From IMG/VR virus record IMGVR_UViG_3300022868_000009, positions 186,001 through 250,000 of that record: a stretch of DNA of 64,000 bases; one strand, given 5' to 3'. Position numbers and translations under genes: made by a program. Below are positions 30,549 to 56,108 of the stretch, in pieces. Position 1 is the first letter of the stretch, and each line of letters starts with the position of its first letter. The notes beneath the pieces are model-generated. The model saw only the letters and a program-made list of their open reading frames with translations. It ran no database searches and was not told the origin of the DNA.

Positions 30549-32186
30549 CTATGGTAAATACTTTTTAGTAAATTCATCAGTTTTTTGAGGATTTGTATTA
30601 AAATCCACTTGCCATGTTTCTGAACCCGATTCACCACCTGCAGCAACATTTGAAGGGTTAGTAACATCACCAACAATAGAACCAACCTTATAAATTCTCT
30701 TATATCCATTATTAAAATATGTCATTATTTCCTGTGCACCCATATTTCTACCCAATCTACAATCTATTTTAACACCAATATTAATTGGAGAATCATTAAA
30801 AGATAATTGGTTTGCAAAATCAATATTAACTTTATCAACAACTATATTGTTAATTGATAATATAGGCATATATGGATTACCAACTGTTATATGCCATGGT
30901 GTTGAAGGTAAACCTGTCATAACAGATACAGACCCTCTTAAAGGCCATTTATATTTATTTAATGTACTTGCTAATAAACTACCAAGAAGACCATTTGCAT
31001 TAATACTATCAACCCTTTTTACTGCATCCAGACCACTTTTCTTCACTTGAATTAACACATCATCAGATGTTAAACCTACTTCATCATTTTTTTCTTCTGT
31101 GATAGTACCAGTTACTGAACCAATCACCTCTTTAACTATTTTAATAATAGCTAATACAAAAGCTCTTACCAATGTTTTAATAAACCCTAACCATGCATCA
31201 ACAGAACCACTATTTGTAGCAGCTAATAATTTTTTTATAACAGAACTATTAGAATTAGATAAAACATATCTAACATCTGATGTACCCATTTTTAATAAAT
31301 TATCAATTATATCATTCATTGCAATACCTGGATCAATATTATTAATATATTTTTGTTCATAAGATGTTTCTAAAGAAATATCTAAATTAGATACTAAACC
31401 AAATGAATTTGCATCACGAGTAGCACCTTCTTGTAAAACGTTAGGATTACCAAAAGGTATTTCTTGAGAATCAAATCCACCAGATGATTTTCCACCTTCT
31501 TCTTTATTTCTTTCTGTCATACCCATAGCCTTTAAAAACCCAAACAATAAACCTTGTGACCAACCAGGTATAGGTATAGATTTACCAGCATCAAAATCAA
31601 ATTCATTTGATAATACTTCACCTAATATTTCATGTACCATTTTTGTTTCTGTTATCCATTTCTCATTAAAAGATAAATTAAATAACTTTTCATCACCATC
31701 TTTAACCCATCCAATAACAGTAGATATAGGTTTTTTGGCATTTTCGGACATTTTCGGCCAATTATTTAAATTAGTAGGAACAATAGTACCTTCTCTATAC
31801 CTTCTCAAAATTACTAATCTATTTATAGGATAAACACCTAAATCTTTTAAATATACAAAATCGGCTGCTTTTAATTTCATAGCATTATTGTCTTTGAAAT
31901 ATTCAATTAATTTTAGATACGGGTTAGCACCTGTATTAGGTTTACTGAAAGAATTAATATTTATCCTATTTGAGATAGCTTTTGTACCAGCCAATTTAGC
32001 ACTAGTGCCTTTAGTTGGTTTATATACATTAACTCTCTCACCACTATCAGATTTTTTATATAAATCACCTGAAACCCAGCCTGATCCCGGGTTATCATAT
32101 ATACTACCTTTATTATCCTTATTATTAAATTGGGATGGATCTAATGAAAATAAAAACTTTAATTCTGTTCCATGACTTCTAAACAT
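30549..32186 (-). CDS. Putative tail tube initiator/baseplate protein
   Basis: First gene of late baseplate operon; WHITVGNPY motif; TTAATATATA upstream. Confidence 0.55.
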   Translation of the reverse strand: MFRSHGTELKFLFSLDPSQFNNKDNKGSIYDNPGSGWVSGDLYKKSDSGERVNVYKPTKGTSAKLAGTKAISNRININSFSKPNTGANPYLKLIEYFKDNNAMKLKAADFVYLKDLGVYPINRLVILRRYREGTIVPTNLNNWPKMSENAKKPISTVIGWVKDGDEKLFNLSFNEKWITETKMVHEILGEVLSNEFDFDAGKSIPIPGWSQGLLFGFLKAMGMTERNKEEGGKSSGGFDSQEIPFGNPNVLQEGATRDANSFGLVSNLDISLETSYEQKYINNIDPGIAMNDIIDNLLKMGTSDVRYVLSNSNSSVIKKLLAATNSGSVDAWLGFIKTLVRAFVLAIIKIVKEVIGSVTGTITEEKNDEVGLTSDDVLIQVKKSGLDAVKRVDSINANGLLGSLLASTLNKYKWPLRGSVSVMTGLPSTPWHITVGNPYMPILSINNIVVDKVNIDFANQLSFNDSPINIGVKIDCRLGRNMGAQEIMTYFNNGYKRIYKVGSIVGDVTNPSNVAAGGESGSETWQVDFNTNPQKTDEFTKKYLP

Positions 32187-39134: not shown

Positions 39135-39395
39135 ATGGACTATAAAATGTGTGTTGAAATTACTAAAATTATAGAATCTATACATAATTATGATGATTTC
39201 GATGATGATTTCGATGGTGTGTCATGTTTTACAGATATTACAAATCTTGATATATTTTGGGATATTGGTGAATTATCAAAAATAGTAACATTGACTATTC
39301 TTATTGGTAGTTCAGAAATATTTTTATATACTATAAATAATGATGAAATATTTATGAATGAAACTTGTTTCTATGTAATTCAACAATCTTATTAA
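39135..39395 (+). CDS. Hypothetical protein, possibly frameshifted from ATG 39044
   Basis: Frame is open from ~39048; upstream ATG is out of frame by one base. Confidence 0.45.
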   Translation: MDYKMCVEITKIIESIHNYDDFDDDFDGVSCFTDITNLDIFWDIGELSKIVTLTILIGSSEIFLYTINNDEIFMNETCFYVIQQSY

Positions 39396-40101
39396 ACTCA
39401 TCTAATAGTTCTTCACTATTTTCAGAATTATCAATATATTCTTTTACCAATTCCTCTACATCAAAAGATTCATCATTGATAGTTATTGGTTCAGTTATAT
39501 CTTTAGGGTAAGTAATCTTCTTAAAATCAAACTTAGATAAAACAATATCAAGTTTAAGTTTATGTTCAATAGCATTTTCCGTTAATTCTAATTCAATCCA
39601 ATTATTCTTAACCCATTCTTTGTCAATGCCTTCTAACTCATCAACATTATCAATTTTGACTTTACCAAATCTCGGACTAGTTGTATTTTCATAGAATTTG
39701 TGAGTTCCACTATCTTCATCAATAACTACAAAGCCAATTTTTTTATAATCTCTTTTCAATTGATATAATCCATCAATTTCATAATTTGCATCTATTTTAT
39801 CATAATACTCAATATTTGGATAATATTTGAAAATATAATTTTTCTTCGAATTTTCTACTTTTACAGGTAAAATAGTTGATATATTATCTAATATTATTGC
39901 AACATAATATAATATATCTATATTAATGTTTTGTCCATTAAATATGTTGCCAGTTATATGAAGTGTGTCTTCTTTATTTGCATTTTTATGTAATAAAGGA
40001 ATGAAAATATTATTAAAATAATCTTGCATCATTTTAAAAATATCAGAATCATTATTTTTCCATCCAAACAAGGGATTAGATATAACAAAGTTTTTAGACA
40101 T
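39352..40101 (-). CDS. Degenerate Mre11/SbcD/gp47-like metallophosphoesterase
   Basis: VISNPLFG and HITGNIFN align to ISDxHFG and GDxFD; YQL..D...GF...YEN..SPRF matches the gp47 C-terminal pattern. Confidence 0.6.
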   Translation of the reverse strand: MSKNFVISNPLFGWKNNDSDIFKMMQDYFNNIFIPLLHKNANKEDTLHITGNIFNGQNINIDILYYVAIILDNISTILPVKVENSKKNYIFKYYPNIEYYDKIDANYEIDGLYQLKRDYKKIGFVVIDEDSGTHKFYENTTSPRFGKVKIDNVDELEGIDKEWVKNNWIELELTENAIEHKLKLDIVLSKFDFKKITYPKDITEPITINDESFDVEELVKEYIDNSENSEELLDEFNKIVELHRNKFHS

Positions 40102-40118
40102 GTCTTTTATATTAAAAA

Positions 40119-40586
40119 TTAACCAGAAAGTTTACTTTTACAAATATTACCTAATTGTCCTAATGCTTTATAATTAATATTTTCAAACATTTCCCAAGTG
40201 ACTACTTCTACATCTTCAAATCTTTGTGTTTGTGGTCCTTGTAAATTATGAATTTGTTGTGGTTTAGGGTATGATATAACTTCATTTAAACTATTTTCAC
40301 CAATAAACTGGTTTAATCCGTTTGGATCATTGGCAGGTTTTCTTTTTTTATTTTGTTGAATATAAGGATTGCTGTTTGTTTGTGGAACACCATTAACTTT
40401 AATCTCACAATCTATATTCCATCCATCATTAAGATTTTCATTGATTTGATATTGACTCAAATCTGGAGTCTCATTTAATGATTCCATATCATCATACTGT
40501 GGAGTTTCATTTAAAGGTTTTAATTCCTCTTCACTATTATTGTTTTCTTGTACTTGTTTAAATGCTTTTAAATATTCCTCATTCAT
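40119..40586 (-). CDS. Hypothetical low-complexity late protein
   Basis: TATATA upstream; repeated LNETP. Confidence 0.6.
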   Translation of the reverse strand: MNEEYLKAFKQVQENNNSEEELKPLNETPQYDDMESLNETPDLSQYQINENLNDGWNIDCEIKVNGVPQTNSNPYIQQNKKRKPANDPNGLNQFIGENSLNEVISYPKPQQIHNLQGPQTQRFEDVEVVTWEMFENINYKALGQLGNICKSKLSG

Positions 40587-40619
40587 GACAAAATTTGTTA
40601 TTTTTTCTATATATAAAAA

Positions 40620-40641
40620 AAACCAGTTATAAACTGGTTTA
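40620..40641. terminator. Hairpin terminator
   Basis: AAACCAGTT-ATA-AACTGGTTT. Confidence 0.65.
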
Positions 40642-41238
40642 ATTCAATGTATCTGTAAACTTAACAGTGGAAAACTTTTTATTAAGTTGATTCTTTATTT
40701 TGTTCTTAAATGTATCATCCCATTCACCATCATATTTCAAATCATTAACAACAGATTTTTTAAAATCATTAAATTGTCTTTGAATAACTTCATAAGGTAC
40801 ATTTGATCTAATTTCACCATTATCAATTTGACTTCTTATTCTATGATTAGATATTTCTACACCAGGTCTAAAAACAATAGCTGTTTTCTTAACATCAAGA
40901 AACTGTTTAATAGAGCTATTTCTTGTTGTACTATTTGTATTAATAGCATCTAAAACAGCCACACCATATTCTTTTAATAATACTTTAATTCTAGCATATG
41001 CAACTTCCCATGCTTTTTTAGATCTCCACCAATCTCCACTGTTTCCAGCATTTATGTCACCGTATAATTCTAATCTAATATCATCTGGCGCAATTCGAAT
41101 ATCATCAATTGTTAAGCCGTTCTTATCTAATATTTTTTTAACTTCTGGAAAATCATTTAAAAATACATTATTAAAATAAGTTGATTTTCCGGAACCTGAA
41201 ATTCCAATTGGAAAATATAGAATTGGTTTATTTGCCAT
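40639..41238 (-). CDS. P-loop kinase (polynucleotide kinase/AAA_33-like)
   Basis: GISGSGKST, PDDIR, LDAIN, R...R..VP.EVI.RQ. Confidence 0.82.
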   Translation of the reverse strand: MANKPILYFPIGISGSGKSTYFNNVFLNDFPEVKKILDKNGLTIDDIRIAPDDIRLELYGDINAGNSGDWWRSKKAWEVAYARIKVLLKEYGVAVLDAINTNSTTRNSSIKQFLDVKKTAIVFRPGVEISNHRIRSQIDNGEIRSNVPYEVIQRQFNDFKKSVVNDLKYDGEWDDTFKNKIKNQLNKKFSTVKFTDTLN

Positions 41239-41297: not shown

Positions 41298-42158
41298 ATG
41301 AAAGAACCTGATGAAATTGAAAATTTTTTTACTTTTGAAAATGAAGATGAAGATGAAGAAAATAAAAAAGAAGCAAAAGAAGTTAAAAAAAGAATTGAAG
41401 AAGATCATATTAAAGAAGTAAAATCTAATATCTCTGAACTTGAAGATAATATTCAAAATATACTTGATGAAATAGAAGAACCCGTCGAAAACCTTTTTCC
41501 TACCAATGATTTATTACCAGATCTCGATATGGAAATTGATATTCATGATTATGAAAAAGATATTCAAATGGTTAAAATTGCAGCAAGTGAAACAATTACT
41601 TGTTTAGCTAATCTTTATCTTGATGGAGAAACAATGAAAAATAAAAATATTAATAGTATTATTAAAGACGACGCTAATAAATTATCAGAACTTAATTTTA
41701 ATGTAACTCAAACTAAAAGAGCATTAATAATGTGTATGAGACAATTAGATTTAGGTATAAATGATCCTGAAATGTTTCAATCTGTTACTATGTTTCAAAA
41801 AGAAATGAGGGAAACAATCAAAATGGCGTATGGATTACAAATTCAAATGAAAGACTTCTATAAAGGACTTAAAAGTGAATTAGATGAACTTAATAAAGGT
41901 GACGATTTAGAAGATGAATTAGGTGTAAGTGAAATGAATATTATAGGTGACCCTAAAGAACTTAATAATATACTTGAAGCAATGCAAAATGATAGAACAC
42001 TTTTAACTTATAATGAAGAAAGAAAAGAAAGAGAAGAAAGAGAAAGGCTAGAAGATGAAGAGTTCGAAGAAAATAGAAAAAGAAGATTAAAAGAAAAAGA
42101 ATCTGAAGAAAAAGAAACTAAAAAAGAAAATATACCTAAAGAAGAAAATCCTGATTAA
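41298..42158 (+). CDS. Acidic coiled-coil protein (possibly packaging-related)
   Basis: Long ORF behind palindromic TTTATATATAAA; function not recognised. Confidence 0.6.
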   Translation: MKEPDEIENFFTFENEDEDEENKKEAKEVKKRIEEDHIKEVKSNISELEDNIQNILDEIEEPVENLFPTNDLLPDLDMEIDIHDYEKDIQMVKIAASETITCLANLYLDGETMKNKNINSIIKDDANKLSELNFNVTQTKRALIMCMRQLDLGINDPEMFQSVTMFQKEMRETIKMAYGLQIQMKDFYKGLKSELDELNKGDDLEDELGVSEMNIIGDPKELNNILEAMQNDRTLLTYNEERKEREERERLEDEEFEENRKRRLKEKESEEKETKKENIPKEENPD

Positions 42159-42172
42159 AATCAGGATTTTCT
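42143..42172. terminator. Bidirectional terminator between convergent genes
   Basis: AGAAAATCCTGA-TTAAAA-TCAGGATTTTCT perfect 12-bp inverted repeat. Confidence 0.75.
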
Positions 42173-43609
42173 ATTTTGTAATTCCGTTAATTTAAAATAA
42201 AAATCTCGAGCTATTTTCTTTAAGTAATATGTACCCATTCCTTGCATGCCTGTTTTCTCGTTATCTGGATCTGGTACTCTTTTACCATTTAAGTAGTTTA
42301 AACCACTAACATTTGTAATAAATTTATGACCCCCTGAATTTGATTGAATAATATCCCATGCCGTAACATACATATCATTTAATATCTTTTTATCATTTTC
42401 ACTTAATTTTATAAAAGGAACAGTCATCACAGCATCTAACACATTTTCAGATTGCTGATCTAAACCAACAATTTGATCTTTAAATAAAGAAACTAAATCT
42501 TTAAATCTAAAACCAAATTCATTTGAAATATCTTTTGGAGCTTTATTTCTTGTACCTTTAGCAGCTCTGACCATATCTTGTTCAGATATTCTCTTAATAT
42601 TTTTAACAGTTATTTTAACGTTTTGTAAATTAGTTTTGAAATTATTTAATACATCTTGTGCAATATCGCCCAAGTTAATATGTTCAAATTTTGGATCTTT
42701 CTTTTTAAAAGGATTTGTTGAAACTTGAACTAATCCCATTGGCCAAGCCATAATAAAAAAATTAGCATCTGGATATAATTTAAATGAAGCATATCTATCA
42801 TATGAACCAGTATCAAACATTCTAGGACCACCATATTGCATCATTATATCATTCTTAACAACTAATTTTTTAAAATTTTTAAGATTGTCAAAATATGTAT
42901 TTGCATGTTTTTCAATTGATTCAGCAGGATCTAAACCTAAATCTTTAGCTAATTTCTTAATTTCTAAAAACATACTAACTAAACTAGGTTTTGAATTTTC
43001 AACTAAACCTACTAAAAAACCAGGTTTATTTTTATAAGCCAATAATAGTTTATTTACAACAAATCCTAATTTCATTCTATTTGATTTAGTTGATATATCT
43101 TTATTGGTTTTATAGAAAAATTGAATTACATCAGAAGGAGTTATATCTTGACTTGCATAATCTGCACTATCAACAGTATCAATCATATTAACATCTTCTG
43201 CTGAAAATATATCATTAGGTGAAATTTCACCGGAAATAGTACCAGCATTTGATTTAGCTTTCTTAAAATGTGCAGACATAGTTTCTACGCCTATTTGCAT
43301 ATCATGGTGGTCTGTATGAATAACAAATTCTGTTTTACCGTGAGCAAAATCTACTAAAACAGCTAATGTACCGGGTTGTGGTTTATCTAAATGATATTCC
43401 ATACCACCATATTGAATAGTATGATATCTTACTGTTTTAATACCATATTGTTTCAAATATTCTCTCATAGCAATAGCTGATGTAACACCATCTAAATCTA
43501 CATGAAAATATATTTCAGCTTCATCAAAAGTTTTAGATATTTTTTTAATATCACGTATGCCAGATTCATTTAATTTCAGAAACTGATTATAACTTTCTAA
43601 TAAACGCAT
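42161..43609 (-). CDS. DHH-family phosphoesterase with virion-tag N-terminus
   Basis: HVDLDG, VDF, TDHH, SGGH; start revised to MRLLESYNQFLKLNE. Confidence 0.8.
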   Translation of the reverse strand: MRLLESYNQFLKLNESGIRDIKKISKTFDEAEIYFHVDLDGVTSAIAMREYLKQYGIKTVRYHTIQYGGMEYHLDKPQPGTLAVLVDFAHGKTEFVIHTDHHDMQIGVETMSAHFKKAKSNAGTISGEISPNDIFSAEDVNMIDTVDSADYASQDITPSDVIQFFYKTNKDISTKSNRMKLGFVVNKLLLAYKNKPGFLVGLVENSKPSLVSMFLEIKKLAKDLGLDPAESIEKHANTYFDNLKNFKKLVVKNDIMMQYGGPRMFDTGSYDRYASFKLYPDANFFIMAWPMGLVQVSTNPFKKKDPKFEHINLGDIAQDVLNNFKTNLQNVKITVKNIKRISEQDMVRAAKGTRNKAPKDISNEFGFRFKDLVSLFKDQIVGLDQQSENVLDAVMTVPFIKLSENDKKILNDMYVTAWDIIQSNSGGHKFITNVSGLNYLNGKRVPDPDNEKTGMQGMGTYYLKKIARDFYFKLTELQNRKS

Positions 43610-43613
43610 GAAA

Positions 43614-44171
43614 TTAAACATTTTTTAACAGATTCATTAAATCATCATTTAATATCTGTAACACTTTTTTACCATTTAGTTCAATTTGTGGGACATTCTT
43701 AATTATAGAAAAAACATCATTGCCCTCAACAACTATTTCACTAAATAATTTATCAAGTTGTGGATTTCTTCTATAATAAGAAACTAAATTATCAACAAAC
43801 TCTTTTAATTTTAATTCATGATTTTCATTATATTTCAAAACTAATAAAGATTTATCAGTTTGCTCTATTATCATGAAATGTAAATCATCTTTAGAATGAT
43901 TATTTGATTCTAAAAGAGAATAAGCATCAGAAGGTTTATAATTATCTAAAAATTTAGCGACTTTGCCATTAAGTTTAAACCTAGGTTTTTTCCTACTAAC
44001 ATTTGGATCTCTGTTATCTCTTCTTGGAGGTTTAGATAACTCTTGAGCCATTGCAGCCAAATTAGCCTTCTTAATCGGAATTTCCTTTGGAATTTCAGGA
44101 ACAGAACTAGTAATAGTTTTTGAACTACCACCACCTGTTGATGCAAAATCACTATATTTTTTTAAGCCCAT
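43614..44171 (-). CDS. Putative virion protein (MGLKKYSDF)
   Basis: Late operon, tag-like N-terminus. Confidence 0.6.
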   Translation of the reverse strand: MGLKKYSDFASTGGGSSKTITSSVPEIPKEIPIKKANLAAMAQELSKPPRRDNRDPNVSRKKPRFKLNGKVAKFLDNYKPSDAYSLLESNNHSKDDLHFMIIEQTDKSLLVLKYNENHELKLKEFVDNLVSYYRRNPQLDKLFSEIVVEGNDVFSIIKNVPQIELNGKKVLQILNDDLMNLLKNV

Positions 44172-44181
44172 TTTTTAATTT

Positions 44182-44703
44182 TTAAATTTCTTGACTACCT
44201 TGTTGTAACTGTTGACCTTGTTGTTGTAATTTCTGGCCTTGTTGTTGTAATTGCTGCCCTTGTGTTTGTAGATTTTGACCTTGTGCTTGTAAACCATCAT
44301 CCTGTGCAGGAATATCCTGTGCAGTTTGTTGAGCTTGAGTTTCATCTGGAACATCTTGTAATGGTTGAACTTGTTGCGTTTGAGCTTGTTGCATTTGAGG
44401 TTGAACTTGTGCACCTTTTGCATAATTAGAACCCATTGCCATTGTAACAGGCAAATTCTCAATGTTCATATATGATGAAGCGATATAGTTAACAATCATT
44501 TCAGCCATTTGTTCTGCACCATAAAGATCTTTAACATCTCTACCTGTCTCATCTTTAACTTTTTTAGTAAAAGCGTTAATTAATGATTTAGGTACATCAA
44601 CGTTTGGTAATACTCTATAAACATCATCAATAGCAAATACAGTTTCTTGAACTTTATTTCCTTTTGAATTTTTAAAATCATTTAGATTTGTTAAATGTTT
44701 CAT
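44182..44703 (-). CDS. Putative virion protein with Q-rich tail (MKHLTNLNDF)
   Basis: TTAATATATA upstream; QGQ heptad repeats. Confidence 0.7.
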   Translation of the reverse strand: MKHLTNLNDFKNSKGNKVQETVFAIDDVYRVLPNVDVPKSLINAFTKKVKDETGRDVKDLYGAEQMAEMIVNYIASSYMNIENLPVTMAMGSNYAKGAQVQPQMQQAQTQQVQPLQDVPDETQAQQTAQDIPAQDDGLQAQGQNLQTQGQQLQQQGQKLQQQGQQLQQGSQEI

Positions 44704-44756
44704 AATCGGATTTTTTATTTTTTATTATATATTAAACTTTATTTCTCATTTTTCTT

Positions 44757-45584
44757 TTAGAATATATTCTTAATATCCTGCCATGTGGTTCTTCTAGTAA
44801 TTCCTAAACCTATACCAATATAAGGACCTACTCCTTTATTCATAGGATTATACATAAAACCAACTGAAAACGTTGGACCAATTCCCCATCTATATTTAGG
44901 CATAATAGCTTTTAATACTTTAGATTTTTGTGGATCTATCAAAGCACCATCCAAATTAGCAATACTGAAACCTGGATAATCAGATTTAATAAATATTTTT
45001 AATTGACCTTTTTCTTCAATTAAACCAGTTGTTAAACCTAAACTAAATTCATCTTTTAATAATGTTGTTATAATAGGTTTTACAATTTTACCACTATCTA
45101 TCATAAATCTAGATTCACCAACTAATGTTCTACTATTATATTTATCAAACTGTTTAAAATAATCCCATTTCAACCCATTTGAACCATCAGGATAAACAGT
45201 ATCAGTAGTGTGTATTATAATAGGTTCTTTATTTTTAATCTTAGCTAAAGCAGTTGCTAGATAAATAACATCACCCCTTTGTTTTTTAACTTCATCATAT
45301 AATTCTTTATTCTTTTCTTTTAGTTCTTTCTTATCAGCAATTAATACAGCTCTCTCATATTGTAATTCATTATTCTTATTATAAACCTTTATTAAAGTAT
45401 CTTTATAATATGATTCATTTTGTTCTTTAATTATTAATTTATCTTGTAATTTTCCAACTTTATCACATTTCTGAATAAAAAGTAATATTACAATCGCACC
45501 AGCAATTAATAAAACTGTTCTTTGATTTTTAGGATCTGAAATAAAACCCCATATTTTCTTTAATATTTCCCAAAATTTACCCAT
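44757..45584 (-). CDS. Membrane-anchored coiled-coil protein, possible spanin-like lysis protein
   Basis: TM ending LLFIQKC, coiled coil, C-terminal Gly/aromatic beta hairpin. Confidence 0.5.
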   Translation of the reverse strand: MGKFWEILKKIWGFISDPKNQRTVLLIAGAIVILLFIQKCDKVGKLQDKLIIKEQNESYYKDTLIKVYNKNNELQYERAVLIADKKELKEKNKELYDEVKKQRGDVIYLATALAKIKNKEPIIIHTTDTVYPDGSNGLKWDYFKQFDKYNSRTLVGESRFMIDSGKIVKPIITTLLKDEFSLGLTTGLIEEKGQLKIFIKSDYPGFSIANLDGALIDPQKSKVLKAIMPKYRWGIGPTFSVGFMYNPMNKGVGPYIGIGLGITRRTTWQDIKNIF

Positions 45585-45586: not shown

Positions 45587-47539
45587 TTATAAACTATTTT
45601 TTGACGAATCTATTGGTGGTGTACCATCTCTAGAAGTTTTATTACTTGGATTAAACACCGCACTCATAGAACTATTTGGTATTGAATTATCACCAGTAAT
45701 TTTATTTTCACCTAGTACCCAATAACCTTTATTCCAAATTCCATTATACCAATTACCAAGATAAAATTTTCCATTAATAAAAGTTCCATTATACCAATCA
45801 CCAGACCAAAAATATCCATCATTAAATGTACCACCACTCCATCTACTAAAAAATATATTAGTTTTTGTTGATGAACCATTTTTCCAATCAGCATATATTA
45901 TATCGCTATTTTCTGCTATACCATTTTCCCAAATTGTATTTGTTGTTCCTGTCATGCCTAAAATCGGATCATAAATATTCTCTGTTTCAGAATTGAAAAA
46001 TTTACCATTTTTCCATGTACCATGACTCCATGTTGAATTATTAAACTCGCCTTGATACCAAGTACCAGAACTCCATGTAGAATTTATCATTTTTCCATTA
46101 TACCATGAACCATCTCTCCAACCACCATTATTAAAAGTTCCACCATACCACACACCGTCATACCACGTACCAGTTTCAAATATTCCATTATTCCAGATTC
46201 CATTATTCCATGTAGATCCACTACCTTTAAAAGCACCATTATTAAAAATTCCATCATACCATGTAACATAATTAATTATATTACCATTATTAAAAGTTCC
46301 ATCATACCAGTATATTTTATAATAATATATCAATAATTTTAAATCTCCACTCATATCACCACCATTAAATGTACCACCTGACCACATACAATCTATATTA
46401 TCTGCATTAAAATTGCCATTATTAAAAACACCATTATACCATTGTGAATCTACAAATGTTCCATCATTAAAAGTACCACCAGTCCAATTTGATCTATAAA
46501 AATACCCATCATTAAAAATACCATTTAACCAAGTTTTTGAACTATTAAAATAACCAAATATCCCATTATTCCAAATACCATCATACCAAACACTTGGTCC
46601 AAATTTTTGACTTTCTTCACTTAATAAAGAATAATCTTCACCTATATCATATTCCCATGTACCATAACTCCAAATACAATTATTTTCCACCGTACAATTT
46701 TTAAAATATCCACCAGTAATTATGTAATCACTTATCACACATTCTTCAAAATATCCACCACTTATAATATGATTAGAGCCATTAAAAACTCCATTATAAT
46801 AAATACCAGATTCTATATTAGTTATATAAATATTTGAACTAATTGAATTTTCACAACCAATATAACTATAACCATTATTATTATTATTTTTACTTATAGA
46901 TAAAGATAATATATCATCTTCAGTATTAACTAATGTAGGATACATATAATCATATTTTAATTCAAATGTTGTACCAGTAGAATTACAAACAAAAAAGATA
47001 CCTTGATTTACATTAACATCACCAATCAAATCACATTCTTTTATAATAGCTGCATCTATATAACCATCATTTATTGTGATATTTTCACATTTAACCAAAC
47101 TAATATAATGATTTGTTAAATTAACATTTGAAGGTAAATCTTCATATTTTTTATTAATAATAATTAGATTTCTATTACTATCTACATATATTACTTTATA
47201 TCCATTATCTTTAACATAAGGAAAATTTAAATCATATCTTCTTTCATAAAATGTATCAATATTACCAGTTGCATCATCAAAACTTGAAATATAAACTATA
47301 TCTCCTATTTTAATATTAGAATCTAACATTGTATAAAACCCAAGATATTCATTATATCTTTCTGGTATGTTTACAATCTTAACAGAATTTCTTGTTTCAG
47401 GATATTTTGCAAGTTCTCTTTTTCTAACAGGATCAATAGGATCTGATAAATTAACATTAATACCCAATTCTAATGATAGACCCTTTATAATTCCATTTGA
47501 ATTTAATGTGTCAACAGGTATGTTTGTTATTCTAGCCAT
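45587..47539 (-). CDS. Late protein with W-x-x-G-x-F-x-x-G beta-solenoid repeats
   Basis: Start revised to MARITNIP; many WYDG/FNNG pentads; TATATA upstream. Confidence 0.75.
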   Translation of the reverse strand: MARITNIPVDTLNSNGIIKGLSLELGINVNLSDPIDPVRKRELAKYPETRNSVKIVNIPERYNEYLGFYTMLDSNIKIGDIVYISSFDDATGNIDTFYERRYDLNFPYVKDNGYKVIYVDSNRNLIIINKKYEDLPSNVNLTNHYISLVKCENITINDGYIDAAIIKECDLIGDVNVNQGIFFVCNSTGTTFELKYDYMYPTLVNTEDDILSLSISKNNNNNGYSYIGCENSISSNIYITNIESGIYYNGVFNGSNHIISGGYFEECVISDYIITGGYFKNCTVENNCIWSYGTWEYDIGEDYSLLSEESQKFGPSVWYDGIWNNGIFGYFNSSKTWLNGIFNDGYFYRSNWTGGTFNDGTFVDSQWYNGVFNNGNFNADNIDCMWSGGTFNGGDMSGDLKLLIYYYKIYWYDGTFNNGNIINYVTWYDGIFNNGAFKGSGSTWNNGIWNNGIFETGTWYDGVWYGGTFNNGGWRDGSWYNGKMINSTWSSGTWYQGEFNNSTWSHGTWKNGKFFNSETENIYDPILGMTGTTNTIWENGIAENSDIIYADWKNGSSTKTNIFFSRWSGGTFNDGYFWSGDWYNGTFINGKFYLGNWYNGIWNKGYWVLGENKITGDNSIPNSSMSAVFNPSNKTSRDGTPPIDSSKNSL

Positions 47540-47957
47540 TAATAATCTTAATTTAGTTTTATATATAAAATATTGATTAGTGATAAAAAAATTTTTCAAA
47601 AATTTCCTTGAATTCTCTAAGATGTTGATTTTATTGTATTTGAATTTTCAACAAATCCTTTAAATATAATAGTTTTAGAAATTTTAAAAAAGTGAAAAAT
47701 TTTTTAAATATATAAATAGTGTAGTATTTAAACAGAATTTAGATTGAAAAGTATTAAAAAAATTAAAAACTTTTATTTGAATTCGTTTTATATGATTTAA
47801 GATAAATTTTAAAACGCTTTAAAGTTTTTCAGTTGAACTAAACAACATTAAAAATTAGTATTATGAAGATTCAAATAATTCAAAGGCAATTAATAGCAAT
47901 CAAAGGATTTTTTAAGAATTACAAGAATTTTCATACAAAAAAAGGCAATTATAGGCA

Positions 47958-48991: not shown

Positions 48992-49966
48992 ATGAAAATA
49001 TATAAATTTAATTCTTTTATATTTGAAAAAAGTTCTCTAACTTCAATTGGAATACCAAATGAAGTTCTTAAACAAATTCAAATAGATTACGAATTACCAC
49101 ATAATATAAAATGGGAAGAACTTACATTTTCAAACACCATCAAATCATCACTAGAAAATGATGACAAAAATCTATATATTGAAATAAATAAAGAAGGCAC
49201 TAAAGTAAACGTAATAACATCAATAAGAAAAAATAAAAAGAAAATCTACATATTAGACGAATATAAATATAATTTCGGATGGGAAAAATCAGAAAGAATT
49301 GATATAACATTCGCACCAATTGTACAAAAAATGTCATTTAAAAGTATATATTATCACTGTGAATCTAAAAACTTTAAACTCACATCCAAAAAAGAAAGAT
49401 CACTTGAAAATATAAATGTCCAATATGAAAATTTTAATACACAATTTAAAAAAGACTTTACTAACAAATTCATAAGTATAATTAAAAAAGATAAATATAA
49501 TCTACTAGACAATACTATAAAAGAAAACGGTCTAACAACATTTGATGAATATTTATATGATTTTGAATCACAATGTTCAGAAGAATTAAAAAGATATTTA
49601 ACAATTAAAGAACTTATTTCTAGATATGGTAAAGATAAAATATTTAGATCATTTATGTATTTCATTAAAACAAATAACTTAAAATTATTTGAATCAAATA
49701 CTTCATTAAAACAAACAATAAGTTTATTCGTTGACGATTATTGGTATGCAATGGACGAATTAGAAGGAGTATTACATGACTTAGGATATAAAAGAATGAG
49801 TGATAGTGGTAAAGATGTTCTTTTTGTAGAAAAAGAAGGCGAAACTAGATTATATTGGTACGGAAAAGCTTTTGAAATTAAAAATGAACCACATTATAAA
49901 ATGCCAGAAGACTGGGCAACTTTTGTTAAAGAAATAACACAAAATTTTGAAGATATAAAAATATGA
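48992..49966 (+). CDS. Putative virion protein (MKIYKFNSFIFE tag; internal LKLFES)
   Basis: Start revised; TTAATATATAG a few nt upstream. Confidence 0.65.
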   Translation: MKIYKFNSFIFEKSSLTSIGIPNEVLKQIQIDYELPHNIKWEELTFSNTIKSSLENDDKNLYIEINKEGTKVNVITSIRKNKKKIYILDEYKYNFGWEKSERIDITFAPIVQKMSFKSIYYHCESKNFKLTSKKERSLENINVQYENFNTQFKKDFTNKFISIIKKDKYNLLDNTIKENGLTTFDEYLYDFESQCSEELKRYLTIKELISRYGKDKIFRSFMYFIKTNNLKLFESNTSLKQTISLFVDDYWYAMDELEGVLHDLGYKRMSDSGKDVLFVEKEGETRLYWYGKAFEIKNEPHYKMPEDWATFVKEITQNFEDIKI

Positions 49967-50175
49967 AACATATAAAAACTTTTGAACAACATGCTGCAGA
50001 TTATTATGAAGGAGAAACTTCATCTTCACCTTCAGGACCAGTTAAAATGAACTGTCCTAATTGTGGTAATGAAATGAATGTAATGTTCCATGAAATTAGT
50101 CCAAAACCAATCACTTGTGAATTTTGTGGTGATAAAATAGAATATCCATATGGTCAAAGTTGGCGTTGGGCATAA
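49963..50175 (+). CDS. Zinc-ribbon protein with virion tag (MKHIKTFE)
   Basis: CPNC...CEFC. Confidence 0.7.
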   Translation: MKHIKTFEQHAADYYEGETSSSPSGPVKMNCPNCGNEMNVMFHEISPKPITCEFCGDKIEYPYGQSWRWA

Positions 50176-50176
50176 T

Positions 50177-50662
50177 ATGAAACATTTAAAAACATATAAT
50201 GAAAAATTTTCTTTTAGGAAAGATGATCAAAGAGAAATTAGAAAATGGCTTTTTAATTATATATGTAATGAATATTTTGGCGAAAAACAAGAATCATTAA
50301 AAAAATATGATAGAAAAATTCGTTTTTCACCAGGTTCTAATGGTAACGATATATATAAAATATATAAAATATTTAATGATAATAGATATAGATTTGACAT
50401 TATATGTGAACTAACAGACGAAGAAATTAAAGATGATATCTATCTCAGTGCAAGTATTGTAAAATTCAAAGATATGTATGATATCTCACTTAGACAGACA
50501 TACAATGAAACAGAAAAACAAATAGAAATTAAAGGTATTGCTTTTGAAGTAAGAGCAATATTAAAAAAGGGAATGGACAAATCAAAATTTAAATCTGAAT
50601 TATCTGATAAATTAAGAGAAACTGTTGAACATGAATTCAGCATTATGACTCATTATTTATGA
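50177..50662 (+). CDS. Putative virion protein (MKHLKTYNE tag)
   Basis: Start revised to ATG 50177. Confidence 0.65.
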   Translation: MKHLKTYNEKFSFRKDDQREIRKWLFNYICNEYFGEKQESLKKYDRKIRFSPGSNGNDIYKIYKIFNDNRYRFDIICELTDEEIKDDIYLSASIVKFKDMYDISLRQTYNETEKQIEIKGIAFEVRAILKKGMDKSKFKSELSDKLRETVEHEFSIMTHYL

Positions 50663-52912: not shown

Positions 52913-53566
52913 TTATCTACTTAATAAACCTATTTTAGAATAAACATTTTTCCAATCATCCTCATTGTTTATTATATATTCAGGTTCTCTGGAATCTAAA
53001 ATAGTTTCAGCATTTTCAATTGTTACATAATCAACGGCTTTTATTTTAATTCCATCATTAATTCTAACTCTATAAGTTTTAAATGTTTCACTCAAAATTT
53101 GTGCTATATATAAAGGAAAAGTACCATCATCAATATACATAACAGCAGAAAGTTTTGCATTTGGCATCTCAACGTACAACTTATTCTCTGTATCTATCAA
53201 ATGATATTTGGATAAGCTTTCTTTAATTCCGTTATGTTTAATAACATCACTATTCTTAACATAATAATAAGAATCTGTAGAAGTTTCTTTAAAAACTAAT
53301 GATGCATCAATTTTTTTACAGAATTGATTTAACATTTTTCTTTGAAAATTGCCTTTATCTAATAAATTACTATTAATTAATCCACTAAACTTATATTTAT
53401 CTTCTAATATAACAACAATTTTTCTATTTGCATTATCATAATACAAACAATCTATATCCAACATATAATTAGATCTAGATAAACTTCTATGTCCTTCAGA
53501 AAAGACATTACTTTTACCCCATTTTCTTTTATAATCTTCAAATATGTTTTTAATTCTTTGTATCAT
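52913..53566 (-). CDS. Hypothetical protein, possible PD-(D/E)XK fold
   Basis: DID...ILEDK; overlaps the 3' end of the CCA gene. Confidence 0.5.
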   Translation of the reverse strand: MIQRIKNIFEDYKRKWGKSNVFSEGHRSLSRSNYMLDIDCLYYDNANRKIVVILEDKYKFSGLINSNLLDKGNFQRKMLNQFCKKIDASLVFKETSTDSYYYVKNSDVIKHNGIKESLSKYHLIDTENKLYVEMPNAKLSAVMYIDDGTFPLYIAQILSETFKTYRVRINDGIKIKAVDYVTIENAETILDSREPEYIINNEDDWKNVYSKIGLLSR

Positions 53567-54857
53567 TACTCATATATTCATTTTTAAATCTTTCGTATTC
53601 TATTCTTCTCATTTCTTCACCTAAAGCCTTTCCATGAAATCCCTTTTGCATTAACTCTTGTGAATTTTTTAAAAAACCATCACTACAATATTTAATGAAA
53701 GCTTCAGTTATATTTGAATATAATCCCTGAGACTTAGTATATAATCTTAATATATTATCATCAATACCAAATCTAGTCTTATTTTTAGCTAACTGATAAA
53801 TATTTGTCATCCACATATCACCTGTAGATTCTTCTATTATCTTTTTCTCATAATTAAATAGAAAAATAATATAATCAATCAAATTATTTTGCAACTTACA
53901 ATCAATTAATTTGTTGGTTAAATTCGAATCATCTGAACTTGGAGTCATCAAAATAGGTAAAATTATCCTATTATCGAAAAGTGAAAAATTCACCCAAGGA
54001 ACCTCTATTTTAATTCCAGGGAAAATCTCATCAAACATATCAAATTCATCAAGTAATCTTAAATATTTAATAAACATAGACATATCATTTGCATCTCTCG
54101 CATGACCTAACATTTTATTCCATTCACCATTTTTAGTGTCAAATATTCTTTCAAATGAAACATCATCTTTCTCAGATATTCCATGTAATCTATGATCCAT
54201 AGTTAATGCATTCTTTACATTTTCACTTATTTTACCATTAGTTCTTGCACAAAATCTAAACAATCTTAATATTCTCAATCTATCTTCATTAAACCTTTCA
54301 TAAGGTTCACCAACAGTTTTAATAAGTCCTTTCTTTAAATCTTCAATACCACCAACATAATCAATGATTTTCTTACTACCAAGATCATAAAACATTGCAT
54401 TAATTGTTAAATCTCTTCTTAAAACATCATCTTGTATTGTAACATTTGAACCAATTTCTACTTTTTGATCATCACCTTTAACATCTCTACCTTTAGCAAT
54501 ATCTTTTCTATAGGTTGCTAATTCATGACCTAATGGTTCTAAATCTGTATAAATTCTTAATACTCCAAAATTTTGTCCTTGCTCTTCTTCAGAAACATAA
54601 CCACCATTCCAATCTTCTAATATCTCTTTAGATTCATCTGGCATTGCATCTGTAACTAAATCAAAATCTTTAGGTTTTTTTCCTTGTAAATAATCTCTAG
54701 GAGCGCCACCTACAACATATAATTCCTTACCATACTTTTTAAATCTTTCATATATTTCTACAATATCTTCGGGTATGAACATATCTTTAGCTTTAACAGT
54801 TTTCTTTTGCATTTTATTTTCATTTAAAAATTCAGAATATTTATACAATTTATTCAT
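53550..54857 (-). CDS. cca: tRNA nucleotidyltransferase (CCA-adding, class II) with virion-tag N-terminus
   Basis: VGGAPRD, DFDLVT, RRDLTINA, EDRLRILR; MNKLYKYSEFLNE; TTAATATATA upstream. Confidence 0.9.
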   Translation of the reverse strand: MNKLYKYSEFLNENKMQKKTVKAKDMFIPEDIVEIYERFKKYGKELYVVGGAPRDYLQGKKPKDFDLVTDAMPDESKEILEDWNGGYVSEEEQGQNFGVLRIYTDLEPLGHELATYRKDIAKGRDVKGDDQKVEIGSNVTIQDDVLRRDLTINAMFYDLGSKKIIDYVGGIEDLKKGLIKTVGEPYERFNEDRLRILRLFRFCARTNGKISENVKNALTMDHRLHGISEKDDVSFERIFDTKNGEWNKMLGHARDANDMSMFIKYLRLLDEFDMFDEIFPGIKIEVPWVNFSLFDNRIILPILMTPSSDDSNLTNKLIDCKLQNNLIDYIIFLFNYEKKIIEESTGDMWMTNIYQLAKNKTRFGIDDNILRLYTKSQGLYSNITEAFIKYCSDGFLKNSQELMQKGFHGKALGEEMRRIEYERFKNEYMSNDTKN

Positions 54858-55874: not shown

Positions 55875-56108
55875 ATGAAATATTTAAAGACATACGAAGA
55901 ATTAACCGATTCACAAAAAGAATCTGAATATAATAAAAAATTAGAAGAACTAGAAGATAAAAAAGAAAGACTTCAGAAAAAACTCCAATATTCAGAAGAT
56001 GTAAGAGATCCAGAAAAAACAGAACAAATAAGAAAAGAAAAGAAAGAAGAAATTGAAAAGAATAAAAAGAAAAAGAGTTCTGAAGATCAAAACTCTTTTG
56101 TATCCTAA
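55875..56108 (+). CDS. Putative internal virion protein (MKYLKTYEE tag)
   Basis: TTAATATATA upstream; charged coiled coil. Confidence 0.65.
   Translation: MKYLKTYEELTDSQKESEYNKKLEELEDKKERLQKKLQYSEDVRDPEKTEQIRKEKKEEIEKNKKKKSSEDQNSFVS

What the first reader, a model, noticed from the sequence alone, without database searches (positions are those of the whole stretch)
42161..43609. Tagged DHH phosphoesterase: candidate injected nucleotide-signal eraser
Seen: intact DHH motifs (HVDLDG, DHH, GGH) and a tag-like N-terminus ending ...LNE, as last gene of a late operon of tagged proteins. Known: DHH/DHHA1 enzymes (NrnA, GdpP, RecJ) hydrolyse nanoRNA, pAp, cyclic dinucleotides or ssDNA. Inference: a virion-delivered enzyme that degrades immune second messengers (CBASS, type III CRISPR) or processes RNA ends.
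Basis: inference. Interest (0 to 1): 0.7.

Follow-up and report, generated by a model that had tools for sequence, protein, structure and literature searches.

The report
Leader-tagged DHH phosphoesterase of huge phage
A huge salt-lake phage with a T4-type head encodes an intact but very divergent DHH/DHHA1 nucleotide phosphoesterase whose short N-terminal leader looks like the T4 capsid-targeting peptide, so it may be loaded into the head and injected, although its substrate and its packaging are unproven.

Summary
Window 42161-43609 (-) encodes a 482-aa protein (486 aa from an upstream ATG). All DHH/DHHA1 catalytic motifs are present and invariant across homologues. The AF2 model is confident (pLDDT 94). 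Its nearest solved relatives are a pAp phosphatase and the pGpG hydrolase PggH, ahead of other NrnA-type enzymes and RecJ.

The protein belongs to a large unnamed family: 328 clusters at 50% identity and at least 565 IMG/VR contigs. In the phage-record collection searched it occurs only in four uncultured huge-phage records. All five carrier genomes tested have a T4-type capsid protein and S77 prohead protease.

The leader MRLLESYNQFLKLNE is real. Across the family, leaders of 6-24 aa end in [LIVMF]-x-E directly before a conserved SG[IL]R. Some members start exactly there. Some leaders nearly copy the T4 capsid-targeting sequence.

This phage's protease-scaffold protein has 11 YSEYIAE-type repeats and an LNE|S junction. 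The gene is last in a unit that carries the promoter-like motif also found before the capsid and baseplate genes, and it ends in a hairpin.

Packaging, cleavage and substrate remain inference. The fold points to short linear nucleotides at least as much as to cyclic immune signals. Similar leaders also sit on DeoC, NUDIX and RNase H enzymes.

The parts
42161..43609 (-). Coding sequence of the DHH/DHHA1 phosphoesterase, 482 aa from the likely start MRLLES. An in-frame ATG at 43619-43621 would add MFNF.
43565..43609 (-). N-terminal leader MRLLESYNQFLKLNE. The proposed propeptide ends in L-N-E directly before the conserved SGIRDI.
   Evidence: (leader residues form a separate helix; pLDDT averages 66 and 57 over residues 1-10 and 11-20)
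43487..43504 (-). DHH motif I, HVDLDG (residues H40, D42, D44, G45).
43337..43354 (-). DHH motif II, VDFAHG (D91 invariant).
43304..43312 (-). DHH motif III, D104-H105-H106 (invariant).
43160..43174 (-). DHH motif IV, VDSAD (D151 invariant). It aligns with DSAQF of PggH.
42794..42796 (-). Invariant R276 in SYDRY. A weak profile alignment places it opposite PggH R228, a residue needed for dinucleotide binding.
   Evidence: tentative
42326..42337 (-). DHHA1 motif SGGH (G431 and H432 invariant).
42143..42172 (.). Perfect 13-bp-stem hairpin across the tail-to-tail junction with the convergent 286-aa gene. Likely a bidirectional terminator that ends the unit.
43614..44171 (-). Upstream 185-aa basic protein (MGLKKYSDFAS..., pI 9.3). 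No promoter motif of its own; its stop lies 4 nt before the DHH start.
44182..44703 (-). Upstream 173-aa acidic, Q-rich protein (MKHLTNLNDFKNSKGNKVQE...), with a weak tag-like N-terminus.
44725..44734 (-). Promoter-like motif TAATATATAA about 22 nt before the 173-aa gene. Probable start of the 173-185-DHH transcript.
44757..45584 (-). 275-aa protein with an N-terminal hydrophobic segment and no tag.
45587..47539 (-). 650-aa protein (670 aa from an upstream TTG) with GxWxxGxFNNG-type repeats and no tag.
47559..47567 (-). Second copy of the promoter-like motif (TATATATAA), 19 nt before the 650-aa gene.

Best explanation
The gene encodes a catalytically competent two-domain DHH/DHHA1 metal-dependent phosphoesterase from a distinct family that is mainly viral.

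Mechanism (inferred):
1. It is transcribed with the two small genes upstream from a promoter of the type found before the capsid and baseplate genes.
2. It is made as a precursor with a 15-aa leader (19 aa from the upstream ATG). The leader resembles the T4 capsid-targeting sequence.
3. The leader takes the precursor into the assembling head core.
4. The T4-type S77 prohead protease removes the leader after L-N-E, leaving a mature enzyme that starts at SGIRDI.
5. The enzyme travels in the head and enters the cell with the DNA.
6. There it hydrolyses short 5'-phosphorylated nucleotides: linear dinucleotides, nanoRNA, pAp, or a nucleotide-derived messenger such as SAM-AMP or a cyclic oligonucleotide.

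What is shown: the fold, the active-site motifs, the extent of the family, the behaviour of the leader across homologues, the presence of the T4-type head machinery, the promoter-like motif and the hairpin.

What is inferred: cleavage, packaging, injection, timing of expression and the substrate.
For: Fold and active site:
- AF2 model pLDDT 94.4, pTM 0.92.
- VIA-align Z 17.6 to pAp phosphatase 8a8k and 17.5 to PggH 7d62. TM1595, B. fragilis Nrn, Rv2837c, DhhP and Pde2 follow at 12.8-14.4, RecJ at about 13.5 and SAM-AMP NrN at 11.3.
- The profile search against PDB puts PggH first, E 6.6e-4.
- Nine of the motif residues are invariant in 57 homologues; H40 and D42 are conserved in at least 90%.

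Family:
- 328 clusters at 50% identity, more than 3251 proteins, at least 565 IMG/VR contigs.
- In the phage-record collection searched, only four uncultured huge-phage records match.
- All five carrier genomes tested have a gp23-type capsid protein and an S77 match (two below Pfam's cut-off), as does the window's own genome (S77 also below cut-off).

Leader:
- 55 of 67 representatives with a recognisable anchor have [LIVMF]-x-E directly before SG[IL]R. Eight start exactly at the anchor. Leader lengths are mostly 6-24 aa.
- 12 of 105 have the aromatic form [YF]xx[FY][ILVFM]xE. Examples are MIRKRYQEFINE and MAKTYKEYLAE, against the T4 CTS MKTYQEFIAE.
- Orthologues in LR745206 and LR756502 begin MISKYNQFINE and MLRKYGQFINE.
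- T4 Alt loses only 6 aa at ITE-6, and T4-type and related giant-phage proteases all cut after Glu (PMC5694885).
- In this genome the aromatic pattern occurs at 22 N-termini against 2.7 expected.

Head core:
- The 811-aa protease-scaffold protein has 11 repeats of ..YSEYIAE.. with a 42-nt period. The repeats are conserved in two related huge phages.
- An LNE|S site sits at the protease/scaffold junction.

Expression:
- The motif TAATATATA is 13-fold enriched upstream of genes.
- It precedes the capsid gene, the baseplate-hub operon and this unit. It is absent before gp32, RNR, UvsX and the helicase.
- 44% of tagged genes carry it against 20% of untagged genes, p = 2e-4.
- A hairpin lies at the 3' end of the gene.
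Against: - There are no proteomic, transcript or biochemical data. No RNA runs hold this sequence.
- The window's own leader departs from the strict aromatic pattern: YNQFLKLNE has two extra residues.
- The window's leader scores poorly on both position matrices.
- A matrix built from the scaffold repeats is not enriched at N-termini.
- Similar leaders sit on DeoC aldolase, NUDIX, RNase H, an NT5C-like protein and the CCA-adding enzyme. About 12% of ORFs carry one, which is many for capsid cargo.
- Tagged proteins are not basic: median pI 5.4.
- The conserved [IL]-x-E could simply be part of the first helix of the fold.
- Nearby genes on the other strand are replication and nucleotide-metabolism genes.
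- Relatives such as PggH do not hydrolyse cyclic dinucleotides.
- The complex prediction of protease with leader gave no answer.
Confidence: 0.4

Rival explanations
1. A cytoplasmic housekeeping nanoRNase / pAp phosphatase (NrnA-like). It finishes the breakdown of host RNA and DNA fragments into mononucleotides to feed replication of a very large genome. On this reading the N-terminal leader is not a capsid tag. It might be a general N-terminal module of this phage's accessory genes, or part of the fold.
For: - The best structural matches are a pAp phosphatase, PggH, TM1595 and Nrn/NrnA.
- RNR, a P-loop kinase, NUDIX, DeoC and an NT5C-like enzyme are encoded in the same genome, and several carry similar leaders.
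- In the roughly 320-kb phages the gene sits among auxiliary metabolic genes.
Against: - Leaders vary in length, end precisely in [LIVMF]-x-E, and are absent in some members.
- Some leaders nearly copy the T4 CTS.
- The gene shares a promoter-like motif with head genes.
- Every carrier genome tested has a match to the S77 protease family, though not always above Pfam's cut-off.
Confidence: 0.28
2. A RecJ-like 5'-3' single-strand DNA exonuclease. It would work with the phage recombination and repair genes nearby (UvsX, gp32, an SbcD-like protein).
For: - RecJ core domains match at Z about 13.5.
- Foldseek against Swiss-Prot models lists RecJ first.
- The only NCBIfam hit is a faint one to RecJ.
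- UvsX, a helicase, gp32 and an SbcD-like gene lie within 10 kb.
Against: - NCBIfam RecJ scores 16.6 bits against a cut-off of 396.9.
- There is no OB-fold or C-terminal RecJ domain.
- NrnA/PggH-type enzymes match better in both structure and profile.
- The recombination genes lie on the other strand or in other transcription units and lack the promoter motif.
Confidence: 0.1
3. An RNA-end processing or repair enzyme. It would act with the tagged CCA-adding enzyme and the Pnkp-like kinase, for example to trim or dephosphorylate damaged tRNA ends after attack by a host nuclease.
For: - A tagged PolyA_pol/CCA enzyme lies at window 53550-54857.
- An AAA_33 kinase with a faint Pnkp match lies at 40639-41238.
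- In the marine relatives, HAD_PNKP, PolyA_pol and a DUF2828 protein lie within 8 kb of the homologue.
Against: - The association is loose, the genes are not in one operon, and it was seen in few independent lineages.
- No DHH enzyme is known to me to act in tRNA repair (own knowledge).
Confidence: 0.08
4. A non-catalytic structural or scaffolding DHH-fold protein, as Cdc45 is.
For: Cdc45 and GAN structures match at Z 10-13.
Against: All metal-binding and catalytic residues are invariant or nearly so across the family. Cdc45 has lost them (own knowledge).
Confidence: 0.02

Closest known systems
PggH (Vibrio cholerae VCA0593, PDB 7d62), a pGpG-specific DHH/DHHA1 phosphodiesterase
   Same: - Top profile hit among solved structures (E 6.6e-4), aligned over motifs I-IV including DSAxF.
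- Z 17.5 over both domains.
- The connector between the domains is helical.
- R276 may correspond to the substrate-binding R228.
   Different: - About 14% identity.
- The phage protein is about 160 aa longer, with helical segments (about 178-248 and 317-415) that lengthen it.
- It has an N-terminal leader.
- Motif II is Asp rather than the Asn55 of PggH.
- Its specificity is unknown.
NrnA-type nanoRNases and pAp phosphatases (8a8k, TM1595, B. fragilis Nrn 3w5w, Rv2837c/CnpB, Pde2, DhhP)
   Same: Stand-alone DHH plus DHHA1 architecture, the same catalytic motifs, Z 12.8-17.6.
   Different: - No match to NCBIfam or Pfam models at their thresholds.
- Extra helical segments.
- Mainly viral distribution.
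- A leader peptide.
CRISPR-associated NrN (B. fragilis), the SAM-AMP phosphodiesterase of type III-B CorA systems
   Same: A DHH enzyme whose closest structural relatives are also PggH and GdpP. Solved NrN structures match at Z 11.3. It shows that this fold can erase a defence messenger.
   Different: NrN is about 250 aa, is encoded by the host in the CRISPR locus, and is not the closest match. Nothing links the phage enzyme to SAM-AMP.
T4 internal proteins IPI-III and Alt, targeted by the capsid-targeting sequence MKTYQEFIAE and cut by gp21
   Same: - A short N-terminal leader with the pattern Y-x-x-F-[IL]-x-E that ends at a hydrophobic-x-Glu site.
- A gp23-type capsid protein and an S77 protease domain match (below Pfam's cut-off) in the same genome.
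- The cargo can be an enzyme, as with Alt.
   Different: - No virion evidence here.
- The cargo is a 54-kDa phosphoesterase.
- The window's leader is a loose variant.
- In this phage dozens of proteins carry similar leaders, and they are not basic.
DHH phosphodiesterases of jumbo phages noted by Iyer et al. 2021 (PMC7824862)
   Same: Same superfamily, and the same proposed role against CBASS and type III CRISPR signals.
   Different: The protein search of 50,697 phage records found this family only in four uncultured huge-phage records. It is therefore probably a different, previously undescribed branch. No leader was described for the earlier set.
Known phage messenger-degrading enzymes: Acb1, AcrIII-1, Apyc1 (own knowledge)
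   Same: The proposed task is the same: removing nucleotide immune signals early in infection.
   Different: These have unrelated folds (2H, DUF1874 and metallo-beta-lactamase, by own knowledge), and I know of none that is packaged in virions.

Membership tests
DHH/DHHA1 phosphoesterase superfamily | Motifs I-IV of the DHH domain (DxD, D, DHH, D) | tested here: met
   H40-x-D42-x-D44, D91, D104-H105-H106 and D151 are invariant or nearly so in 57 homologues.
DHH/DHHA1 phosphoesterase superfamily | DHHA1 domain with a GGGH-type motif | tested here: met
   S429-G430-G431-H432, with G431 and H432 invariant. The structural alignment spans residues 34-481.
DHH/DHHA1 phosphoesterase superfamily | Two-domain fold joined by a linker | tested here: met
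   AF2 pLDDT 94.4. Foldseek probability 1.00 for every hit listed in both libraries but a few family II pyrophosphatase rows at 0.98-0.99. VIA-align Z up to 17.6.
DHH/DHHA1 phosphoesterase superfamily | Pfam PF01368 / PF02272 gathering scores | tested here: not met
   DHH scores 26.1 bits against a cut-off of 28.1. There is no DHHA1 hit. This reflects divergence and does not contradict the fold.
NrnA / PggH-type stand-alone dinucleotide or pAp hydrolases | Closest structural and profile neighbours | tested here: met
   8a8k at Z 17.6 and 7d62 at Z 17.5. PggH is the top profile hit.
NrnA / PggH-type stand-alone dinucleotide or pAp hydrolases | Compact protein of about 300-340 aa; curated model match | tested here: not met
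   482 aa with extra helical segments. No NrnA-type NCBIfam hit.
NrnA / PggH-type stand-alone dinucleotide or pAp hydrolases | Hydrolysis of pApA, pGpG, pAp or nanoRNA | not testable with these tools
   Needs an enzyme assay.
RecJ exonuclease | RecJ equivalog score; OB-fold and C-terminal domains | tested here: not met
   TIGR00644 scores 16.6 bits against a cut-off of 396.9. The model has no extra OB domain.
GdpP / PdeA cyclic-di-AMP phosphodiesterases | N-terminal TM-PAS-GGDEF module before the DHH/DHHA1 domains (own knowledge) | tested here: not met
   Only a 15-19-aa leader precedes the DHH domain.
T4-type capsid-targeted (CTS) head proteins | N-terminal leader resembling MKTYQEFIAE | tested here: inconclusive
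   Family members and orthologues match closely: RYQEFINE, KTYKEYLAE, KYNQFINE. The window's own leader, SYNQFLKLNE, is a looser variant.
T4-type capsid-targeted (CTS) head proteins | Hydrophobic-x-Glu cleavage site at the end of the leader | tested here: met
   L-N-E19 | S20. 55 of 67 representatives have [LIVMF]-x-E at this point and 8 start just after it.
T4-type capsid-targeted (CTS) head proteins | gp21-type (S77) protease and gp23-type capsid protein in the same genome | tested here: met
   for this genome (the S77 domain scores 22-23.5 bits, below the cut-off of 27). Five of five other carrier genomes also have both (S77 above the cut-off in three of five).
T4-type capsid-targeted (CTS) head proteins | Presence of the processed protein in virions, and its ejection | not testable with these tools
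   The family has no cultured member and no proteome is held.
Phage anti-signalling enzymes (anti-CBASS, anti-type III CRISPR) | Hydrolysis of cGAMP, cA3-6 or SAM-AMP, and rescue of phage from the defence system | not testable with these tools
   No PADLOC or other sequence link. Needs assays.

The most novel reading that the evidence does not exclude
This lineage of huge phages has expanded the T4 capsid-targeting principle into a general loading system. Dozens of proteins carry N-terminal leaders of the T4-CTS type: this DHH phosphoesterase, a CCA-adding enzyme, NUDIX, RNase H, DeoC, LRR proteins and many small unknowns. On this reading the leaders dock on a scaffold built of YSEYIAE repeats and are cut after Glu. 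The proteins are then injected as an enzyme kit that acts before any phage gene is expressed. The DHH enzyme would serve as a pre-delivered eraser of nucleotide-based immune signals such as cyclic oligonucleotides, SAM-AMP, or their linear products.
Probability: 0.2. Interest if true: 0.85.

Novelty: new variant of a known kind. Interest (0 to 1): 0.6.

Why it matters
If the leader is a working capsid-targeting signal, this would be, as far as I know, the first nucleotide phosphoesterase delivered inside a phage head. Known phage enzymes that destroy immune messengers are made after infection. A pre-loaded one would act before the defence signal builds up.

It would also give a sequence rule (leader, hydrophobic-x-Glu, S77 protease) for predicting ejected proteins in uncultured jumbo and huge phages.

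Whatever its role, the family is large and unnamed: more than 3000 proteins and at least 565 viral contigs. It has an intact active site and a confident model, so it is an easy and informative target for biochemistry.

If instead it is a plain nanoRNase for nucleotide salvage, the finding is ordinary. What remains of interest then is the genome-wide leader motif.

Tried and rejected
- **Complex prediction.** The S77 protease domain (residues 1-172) was folded with DHH residues 1-40. The verdict was 'no answer', score 0.00. This is not evidence either way.
- **Scaffold-repeat matrix.** A position matrix built from the 11 scaffold repeats was scanned over all N-termini and showed no enrichment: 3 observed against 3.0 expected at threshold 6. 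The link between scaffold and leaders therefore holds only at the level of the pattern [YF]xx[FY][ILV]xE.
- **Strict-motif matrix.** The matrix for the strict motif MK[HY]LKT[YF] gives the DHH leader only 1.0 bit. The DHH protein is not a member of that class.
- **Gene neighbourhood.** The 80 IMG/VR loci retrieved were mostly from one syntenic lineage, so co-occurrence is not independent, and the neighbours differ from the window's.
- **Synteny test.** The 650-aa repeat protein and the 464-aa protein upstream of the orthologue in LR745206 show no significant similarity.
- **Family libraries.** PHROGs, PADLOC and NCBIfam gave nothing useful for the DHH protein. A single-sequence search of PDB gave nothing.
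- **Expression.** No RNA sequencing runs hold the locus, so expression could not be checked.
- **Charge.** Basic charge as a mark of internal proteins was not found.
- **Context of P0048.** The contig that carries the homologue with the most T4-like leader is only 2.4 kb, so it gives no context.
- **Alternative code and DNA repeats.** An alternative genetic code is not needed: coding density is 89% under table 11. A DNA-repeat origin of the N-terminal motif was rejected. Synonymous codons vary at least as much as genome-wide, and upstream DNA is not conserved.
Full report
**What the window is.** The window is bases 186001-250000 of a 344.6-kb IMG/VR virus record that CheckV rates 48% complete. 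GC content is about 25%. The standard code gives 89% coding density. Near-identical DNA occurs in many salt-lake metagenomes and one marine metagenome; no RNA run holds it. The closest records are uncultured huge phages of 634-735 kb: LR745206, LR756502 and LR756501/3.

The genome has a T4 gp23-type major capsid protein (85.5 bits; 64% identical to that of LR756501; distant to Lak phage and cyanophage gp23). It also has an S77 (gp21-type) prohead protease domain (sub-threshold, 22-23.5 bits) at the start of an 811-aa protein.

**The observation.** The ORF at 42161-43621 (-) gives 486 aa. The second ATG (43609, MRLLES...) is the likelier start, for three reasons:
- It lies 4 nt after the stop of the upstream gene.
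- It aligns with the start Met of homologues (M5 is invariant).
- Other gene calls give 482 aa.

So are VDFAHG (90-95) and VDSAD (150-154). In an alignment of 57 homologues, D44, G45, D91, D104, H105, H106, D151, R276, N303, G431 and H432 are invariant. H40 and D42 are conserved in at least 90%. Pfam's DHH model falls just short of its cut-off (26.1 against 28.1 bits), and no DHHA1 hit is reported.

**Fold and nearest relatives.** AlphaFold2 with this alignment gives a confident model, pLDDT 94.4 and pTM 0.92. Residues 1-20 are the least confident part. Residues 3-17 form a separate helix, followed by a coil at 18-24.

Foldseek places the model in the DHH/DHHA1 superfamily with probability 1.00. 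VIA-align matches across both domains are, in order:

| Match | Z |
|---|---|
| Methanogen pAp phosphatase 8a8k | 17.6 |
| pGpG hydrolase PggH 7d62 | 17.5 |
| TM1595, B. fragilis Nrn, Rv2837c, DhhP, Pde2 | 12.8-14.4 |
| RecJ cores | about 13.5 |
| CRISPR-associated SAM-AMP enzyme NrN | 11.3 |

A profile of the family against all PDB sequences finds PggH first (E 6.6e-4), aligned through motifs I-IV. A weak second stretch puts the invariant R276 opposite PggH R228. Mutating R228 abolishes dinucleotide binding (PMC8861645); this correspondence is tentative.

NCBIfam gives only a trace RecJ match, 16.6 bits against a cut-off of 396.9. The protein is therefore an intact but divergent stand-alone DHH/DHHA1 enzyme. 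It is closest to those that act on pAp and short 5'-phosphorylated oligonucleotides. It is enlarged by helical segments at about 178-248 and 317-415.

**The family.**
- An exhaustive HMMER search finds 328 clusters at 50% identity, 114 of them below 1e-30.
- The word-indexed search finds more than 3251 proteins, none with an informative name. Some are fused to a SET domain.
- At least 565 IMG/VR contigs encode a relative, including complete genomes of about 320 kb.
- Among 50,697 phage records in the INPHARED collection, only four uncultured huge-phage records match.
- All five carrier genomes tested have a gp23-type capsid protein and an S77 protease match (above Pfam's cut-off in three).
- A few high-GC homologues carry signal peptides and look cellular.

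**The leader.** Across the family the N-terminus behaves like a detachable module. Among 67 representatives where the conserved SG[IL]R anchor is recognisable:
- 55 have [LIVMF]-x-E directly before the anchor;
- 8 begin exactly at the anchor (MSGIRNI...);
- leader length is mostly 6 to 24 residues.

The abundant freshwater and marine branch has MKKILKE|SGIRDI, with position -3 always I or L, position -1 always E, and position -2 free.

Twelve of 105 representatives carry an aromatic leader of the form [YF]xx[FY][ILVFM]xE. They include MIRKRYQEFINE|E and MAKTYKEYLAE. The orthologues in LR745206 and LR756502 begin MISKYNQFINE|E and MLRKYGQFINE|E.

The T4 capsid-targeting sequence is MKTYQEFIAE. 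It is cut once by the prohead protease, and it carries any fused protein into the head (PMC8442874; PMC3012670). T4 Alt loses only six residues at ITE-6. T4-type and related giant-phage proteases all cut after Glu (PMC5694885).

The window's own leader, MRLLESYNQFLKLNE|SG, keeps Y-x-x-F-L and the L-N-E end. It has two extra residues, so it is a looser variant.

**The head core.** The 811-aa protein at G000 5467-7902 (-) has three relevant features:
- An N-terminal S77 domain.
- A conserved ...LNE|SLG... junction.
- Eleven 14-aa repeats, DKNI.YSEYIAE.., with a 42-nt period.

The same repeats and junction occur in LR745206 and LR756502. The core of each repeat, Y-x-E-Y-I-A-E, has the T4 CTS pattern and ends in a hydrophobic-x-Glu site.

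In this genome the pattern is concentrated in two places. One is this scaffold. The other is the first 11 residues of 22 proteins, against 2.7 expected. A full matrix of the repeat is not enriched at N-termini, so the link holds at pattern level only.

In a 321-kb relative the protease is a separate 241-aa protein. Its acidic scaffold has plain [ILV]-x-E sites without aromatics, and the DHH leader there is the short non-aromatic type. This co-variation is suggestive but rests on two lineages.

**The transcription unit.** The 9-mer TAATATATA is 13-fold enriched in the 70 nt before genes and usually lies 0-40 nt upstream of the ATG, most often 20-30 nt.
- It precedes the capsid gene. A variant, AATATATAG, precedes the protease gene.
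- It precedes the first gene of the baseplate-hub block (30549-32186), the 650-aa gene and the 173-aa gene.
- It is absent before gp32, RNR, UvsX and the DnaB-like helicase.
- Genes with N-terminal tags carry it more often than untagged genes: 24 of 55 against 76 of 387, p = 2e-4.

The 185-aa gene and the DHH gene have no such motif and abut their upstream neighbours. A perfect 13-bp-stem hairpin spans the DHH stop codon at the tail-to-tail junction with a convergent gene.

'Last gene of a probably late unit' is therefore reasonable but inferred. The first two genes of the strand block are untagged, and the two small genes just upstream have only weak tag-like N-termini.

**What argues for caution.**
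- N-terminal motifs of this kind are very common here. A strict form, MK[HY]LKT[YF][EN]E, starts 41 of 479 ORFs and none of 1310 internal-Met controls.
- The looser class sits on a CCA-adding/poly(A) polymerase-family enzyme, a DeoC aldolase, a NUDIX hydrolase, an RNase H, an NT5C-like protein and LRR proteins. This could be an injected enzyme kit, or the motif could have another role.
- Codon analysis shows that selection acts on the peptide, not on the DNA.
- Tagged proteins are not basic.
- The complex prediction gave no answer.

**Most likely function.** I commit to this reading: a late-made precursor whose leader takes it into the head core, where the S77 protease removes the leader after E19. 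The mature enzyme is delivered with the DNA. It hydrolyses short 5'-phosphorylated nucleotides or a nucleotide-derived messenger.

My separate estimates are:

| Claim | Probability |
|---|---|
| Active DHH/DHHA1 hydrolase | about 0.9 |
| Small-nucleotide substrate rather than ssDNA | about 0.65 |
| Leader cleaved and protein packaged | about 0.5 |
| Main role is erasing immune signals | about 0.25-0.3 |

The rivals are salvage nanoRNase, RecJ-like exonuclease, RNA-end repair and a non-catalytic protein. They are listed with their tests.

**Relation to what is known.** The enzyme works like NrnA/PggH-type enzymes but fails their curated model thresholds and size. I file it only in the DHH/DHHA1 superfamily, as a new branch.

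The delivery mode would be that of the T4 CTS. The idea that jumbo-phage DHH enzymes counter CBASS and type III signalling is already published (PMC7824862). So is a DHH enzyme that degrades SAM-AMP, the messenger of a type III CRISPR system (PMC10600005).

What is new is the family itself and its CTS-like propeptide, together with the genome-wide use of such leaders and the CTS-like repeats in the scaffold.

Noticed in passing
Genome-wide in G000. In the window, for example 23672-24121 (-), 24164-24436 (-), 55875-56108 (+) and 50150-50662 (+).: 41 of 479 ORFs begin with a strict motif M-K-[HY]-L-K-T-[YF]-[EN]-E, against 0 of 1310 internal-Met controls. Most are unknowns of 77-200 aa. Synonymous codons vary and upstream DNA is not conserved, so selection is on the peptide. 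The KTYxEF core resembles the T4 CTS.
   Followed up: partly
G000 299-343 kb (outside the window) and scattered elsewhere. In the window, 59500-59922 (-).: 54 of 479 ORFs END with ...[EN][AGS]xK[LM]GL[LM]-stop, against 12 internal occurrences in 102,588 residues. Most are proteins of about 100 aa in tandem arrays, and 15 also carry the strict N-terminal motif. The Gly and Leu codons vary synonymously. The function is unknown. The motif loosely recalls C-terminal clamp-binding or degradation tags (own knowledge).
   Followed up: partly
G000:C1:5467-7902 (-) = L002. Orthologues are in L095 and L096.: The prohead protease is fused to a long scaffold-like region with eleven 14-aa repeats (DKNIxYSEYIAExx, 42-nt period). 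A conserved LNE|S site at the domain junction suggests self-release. The arrangement is conserved in LR745206 and LR756502.
   Followed up: partly
window 53550-54857 (-): A CCA-adding/poly(A) polymerase-family enzyme (PolyA_pol, 1e-29) carries a clear T4-CTS-like leader, MNKLYKYSEFLNE, about 20 aa before the catalytic domain. The promoter-like motif lies just upstream. No tRNA genes are found in the window.
   Followed up: partly
G000 105929-106732 (-), 49472-50173 (-), 292159-292764 (+), 109032-109559 (+), 97218-97820 (-), 336852-337331 (-): Other leader-bearing proteins have recognisable domains: DeoC aldolase, NUDIX, RNase H, an NT5C-like nucleotidase (weak match) and two LRR proteins.
   Followed up: partly
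Genome-wide. In the window, for example 44725-44734 and 47559-47567 (- strand).: The promoter-like motif T(A/T)ATATATA(A) is 13-fold enriched upstream of genes and usually lies 0-40 nt before the ATG, most often 20-30 nt. It is present before the capsid and baseplate-hub genes and absent before gp32, RNR, UvsX and the helicase. It is a candidate late promoter of this phage lineage.
   Followed up: partly
window 40119-40586 (-): An acidic 155-aa protein has four L/I-N-E sites: KPLNETP, ESLNETP, QINEN and NSLNEV. It may be another substrate of the prohead protease.
   Followed up: no
window 45587-47599 (-): A 650-670-aa protein is built largely of GxWxxGxFNNG-type repeats, with faint pentapeptide-repeat matches. 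It is probably a beta-helix and heads the strand block that ends with the DHH gene.
   Followed up: no
G000 1788-3440 (-) and 8010-9752 (+): Two paralogous ORFs of 550-580 aa share a Cys-rich N-terminus and a KYGVDNVFQLEE motif. They flank the capsid and protease genes and interrupt the head module. They may be mobile (homing-endonuclease-like) insertions.
   Followed up: no
Proteins P0072 and P0073; P0173, P0193 and P0196; P0203: The DHH family also includes high-GC, apparently cellular members with signal peptides, phage members fused to a SET domain (PF00856), and members carrying PF25218.
   Followed up: no
window 39352-41238 (-): An SbcD-like fragment protein (PHROG 100) and an AAA_33 P-loop kinase with a faint Pnkp-kinase match lie just beyond the convergent 286-aa gene next to the DHH gene. 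In marine relatives, HAD_PNKP, PolyA_pol and DUF2828 genes lie within 8 kb of the DHH homologue.
   Followed up: partly
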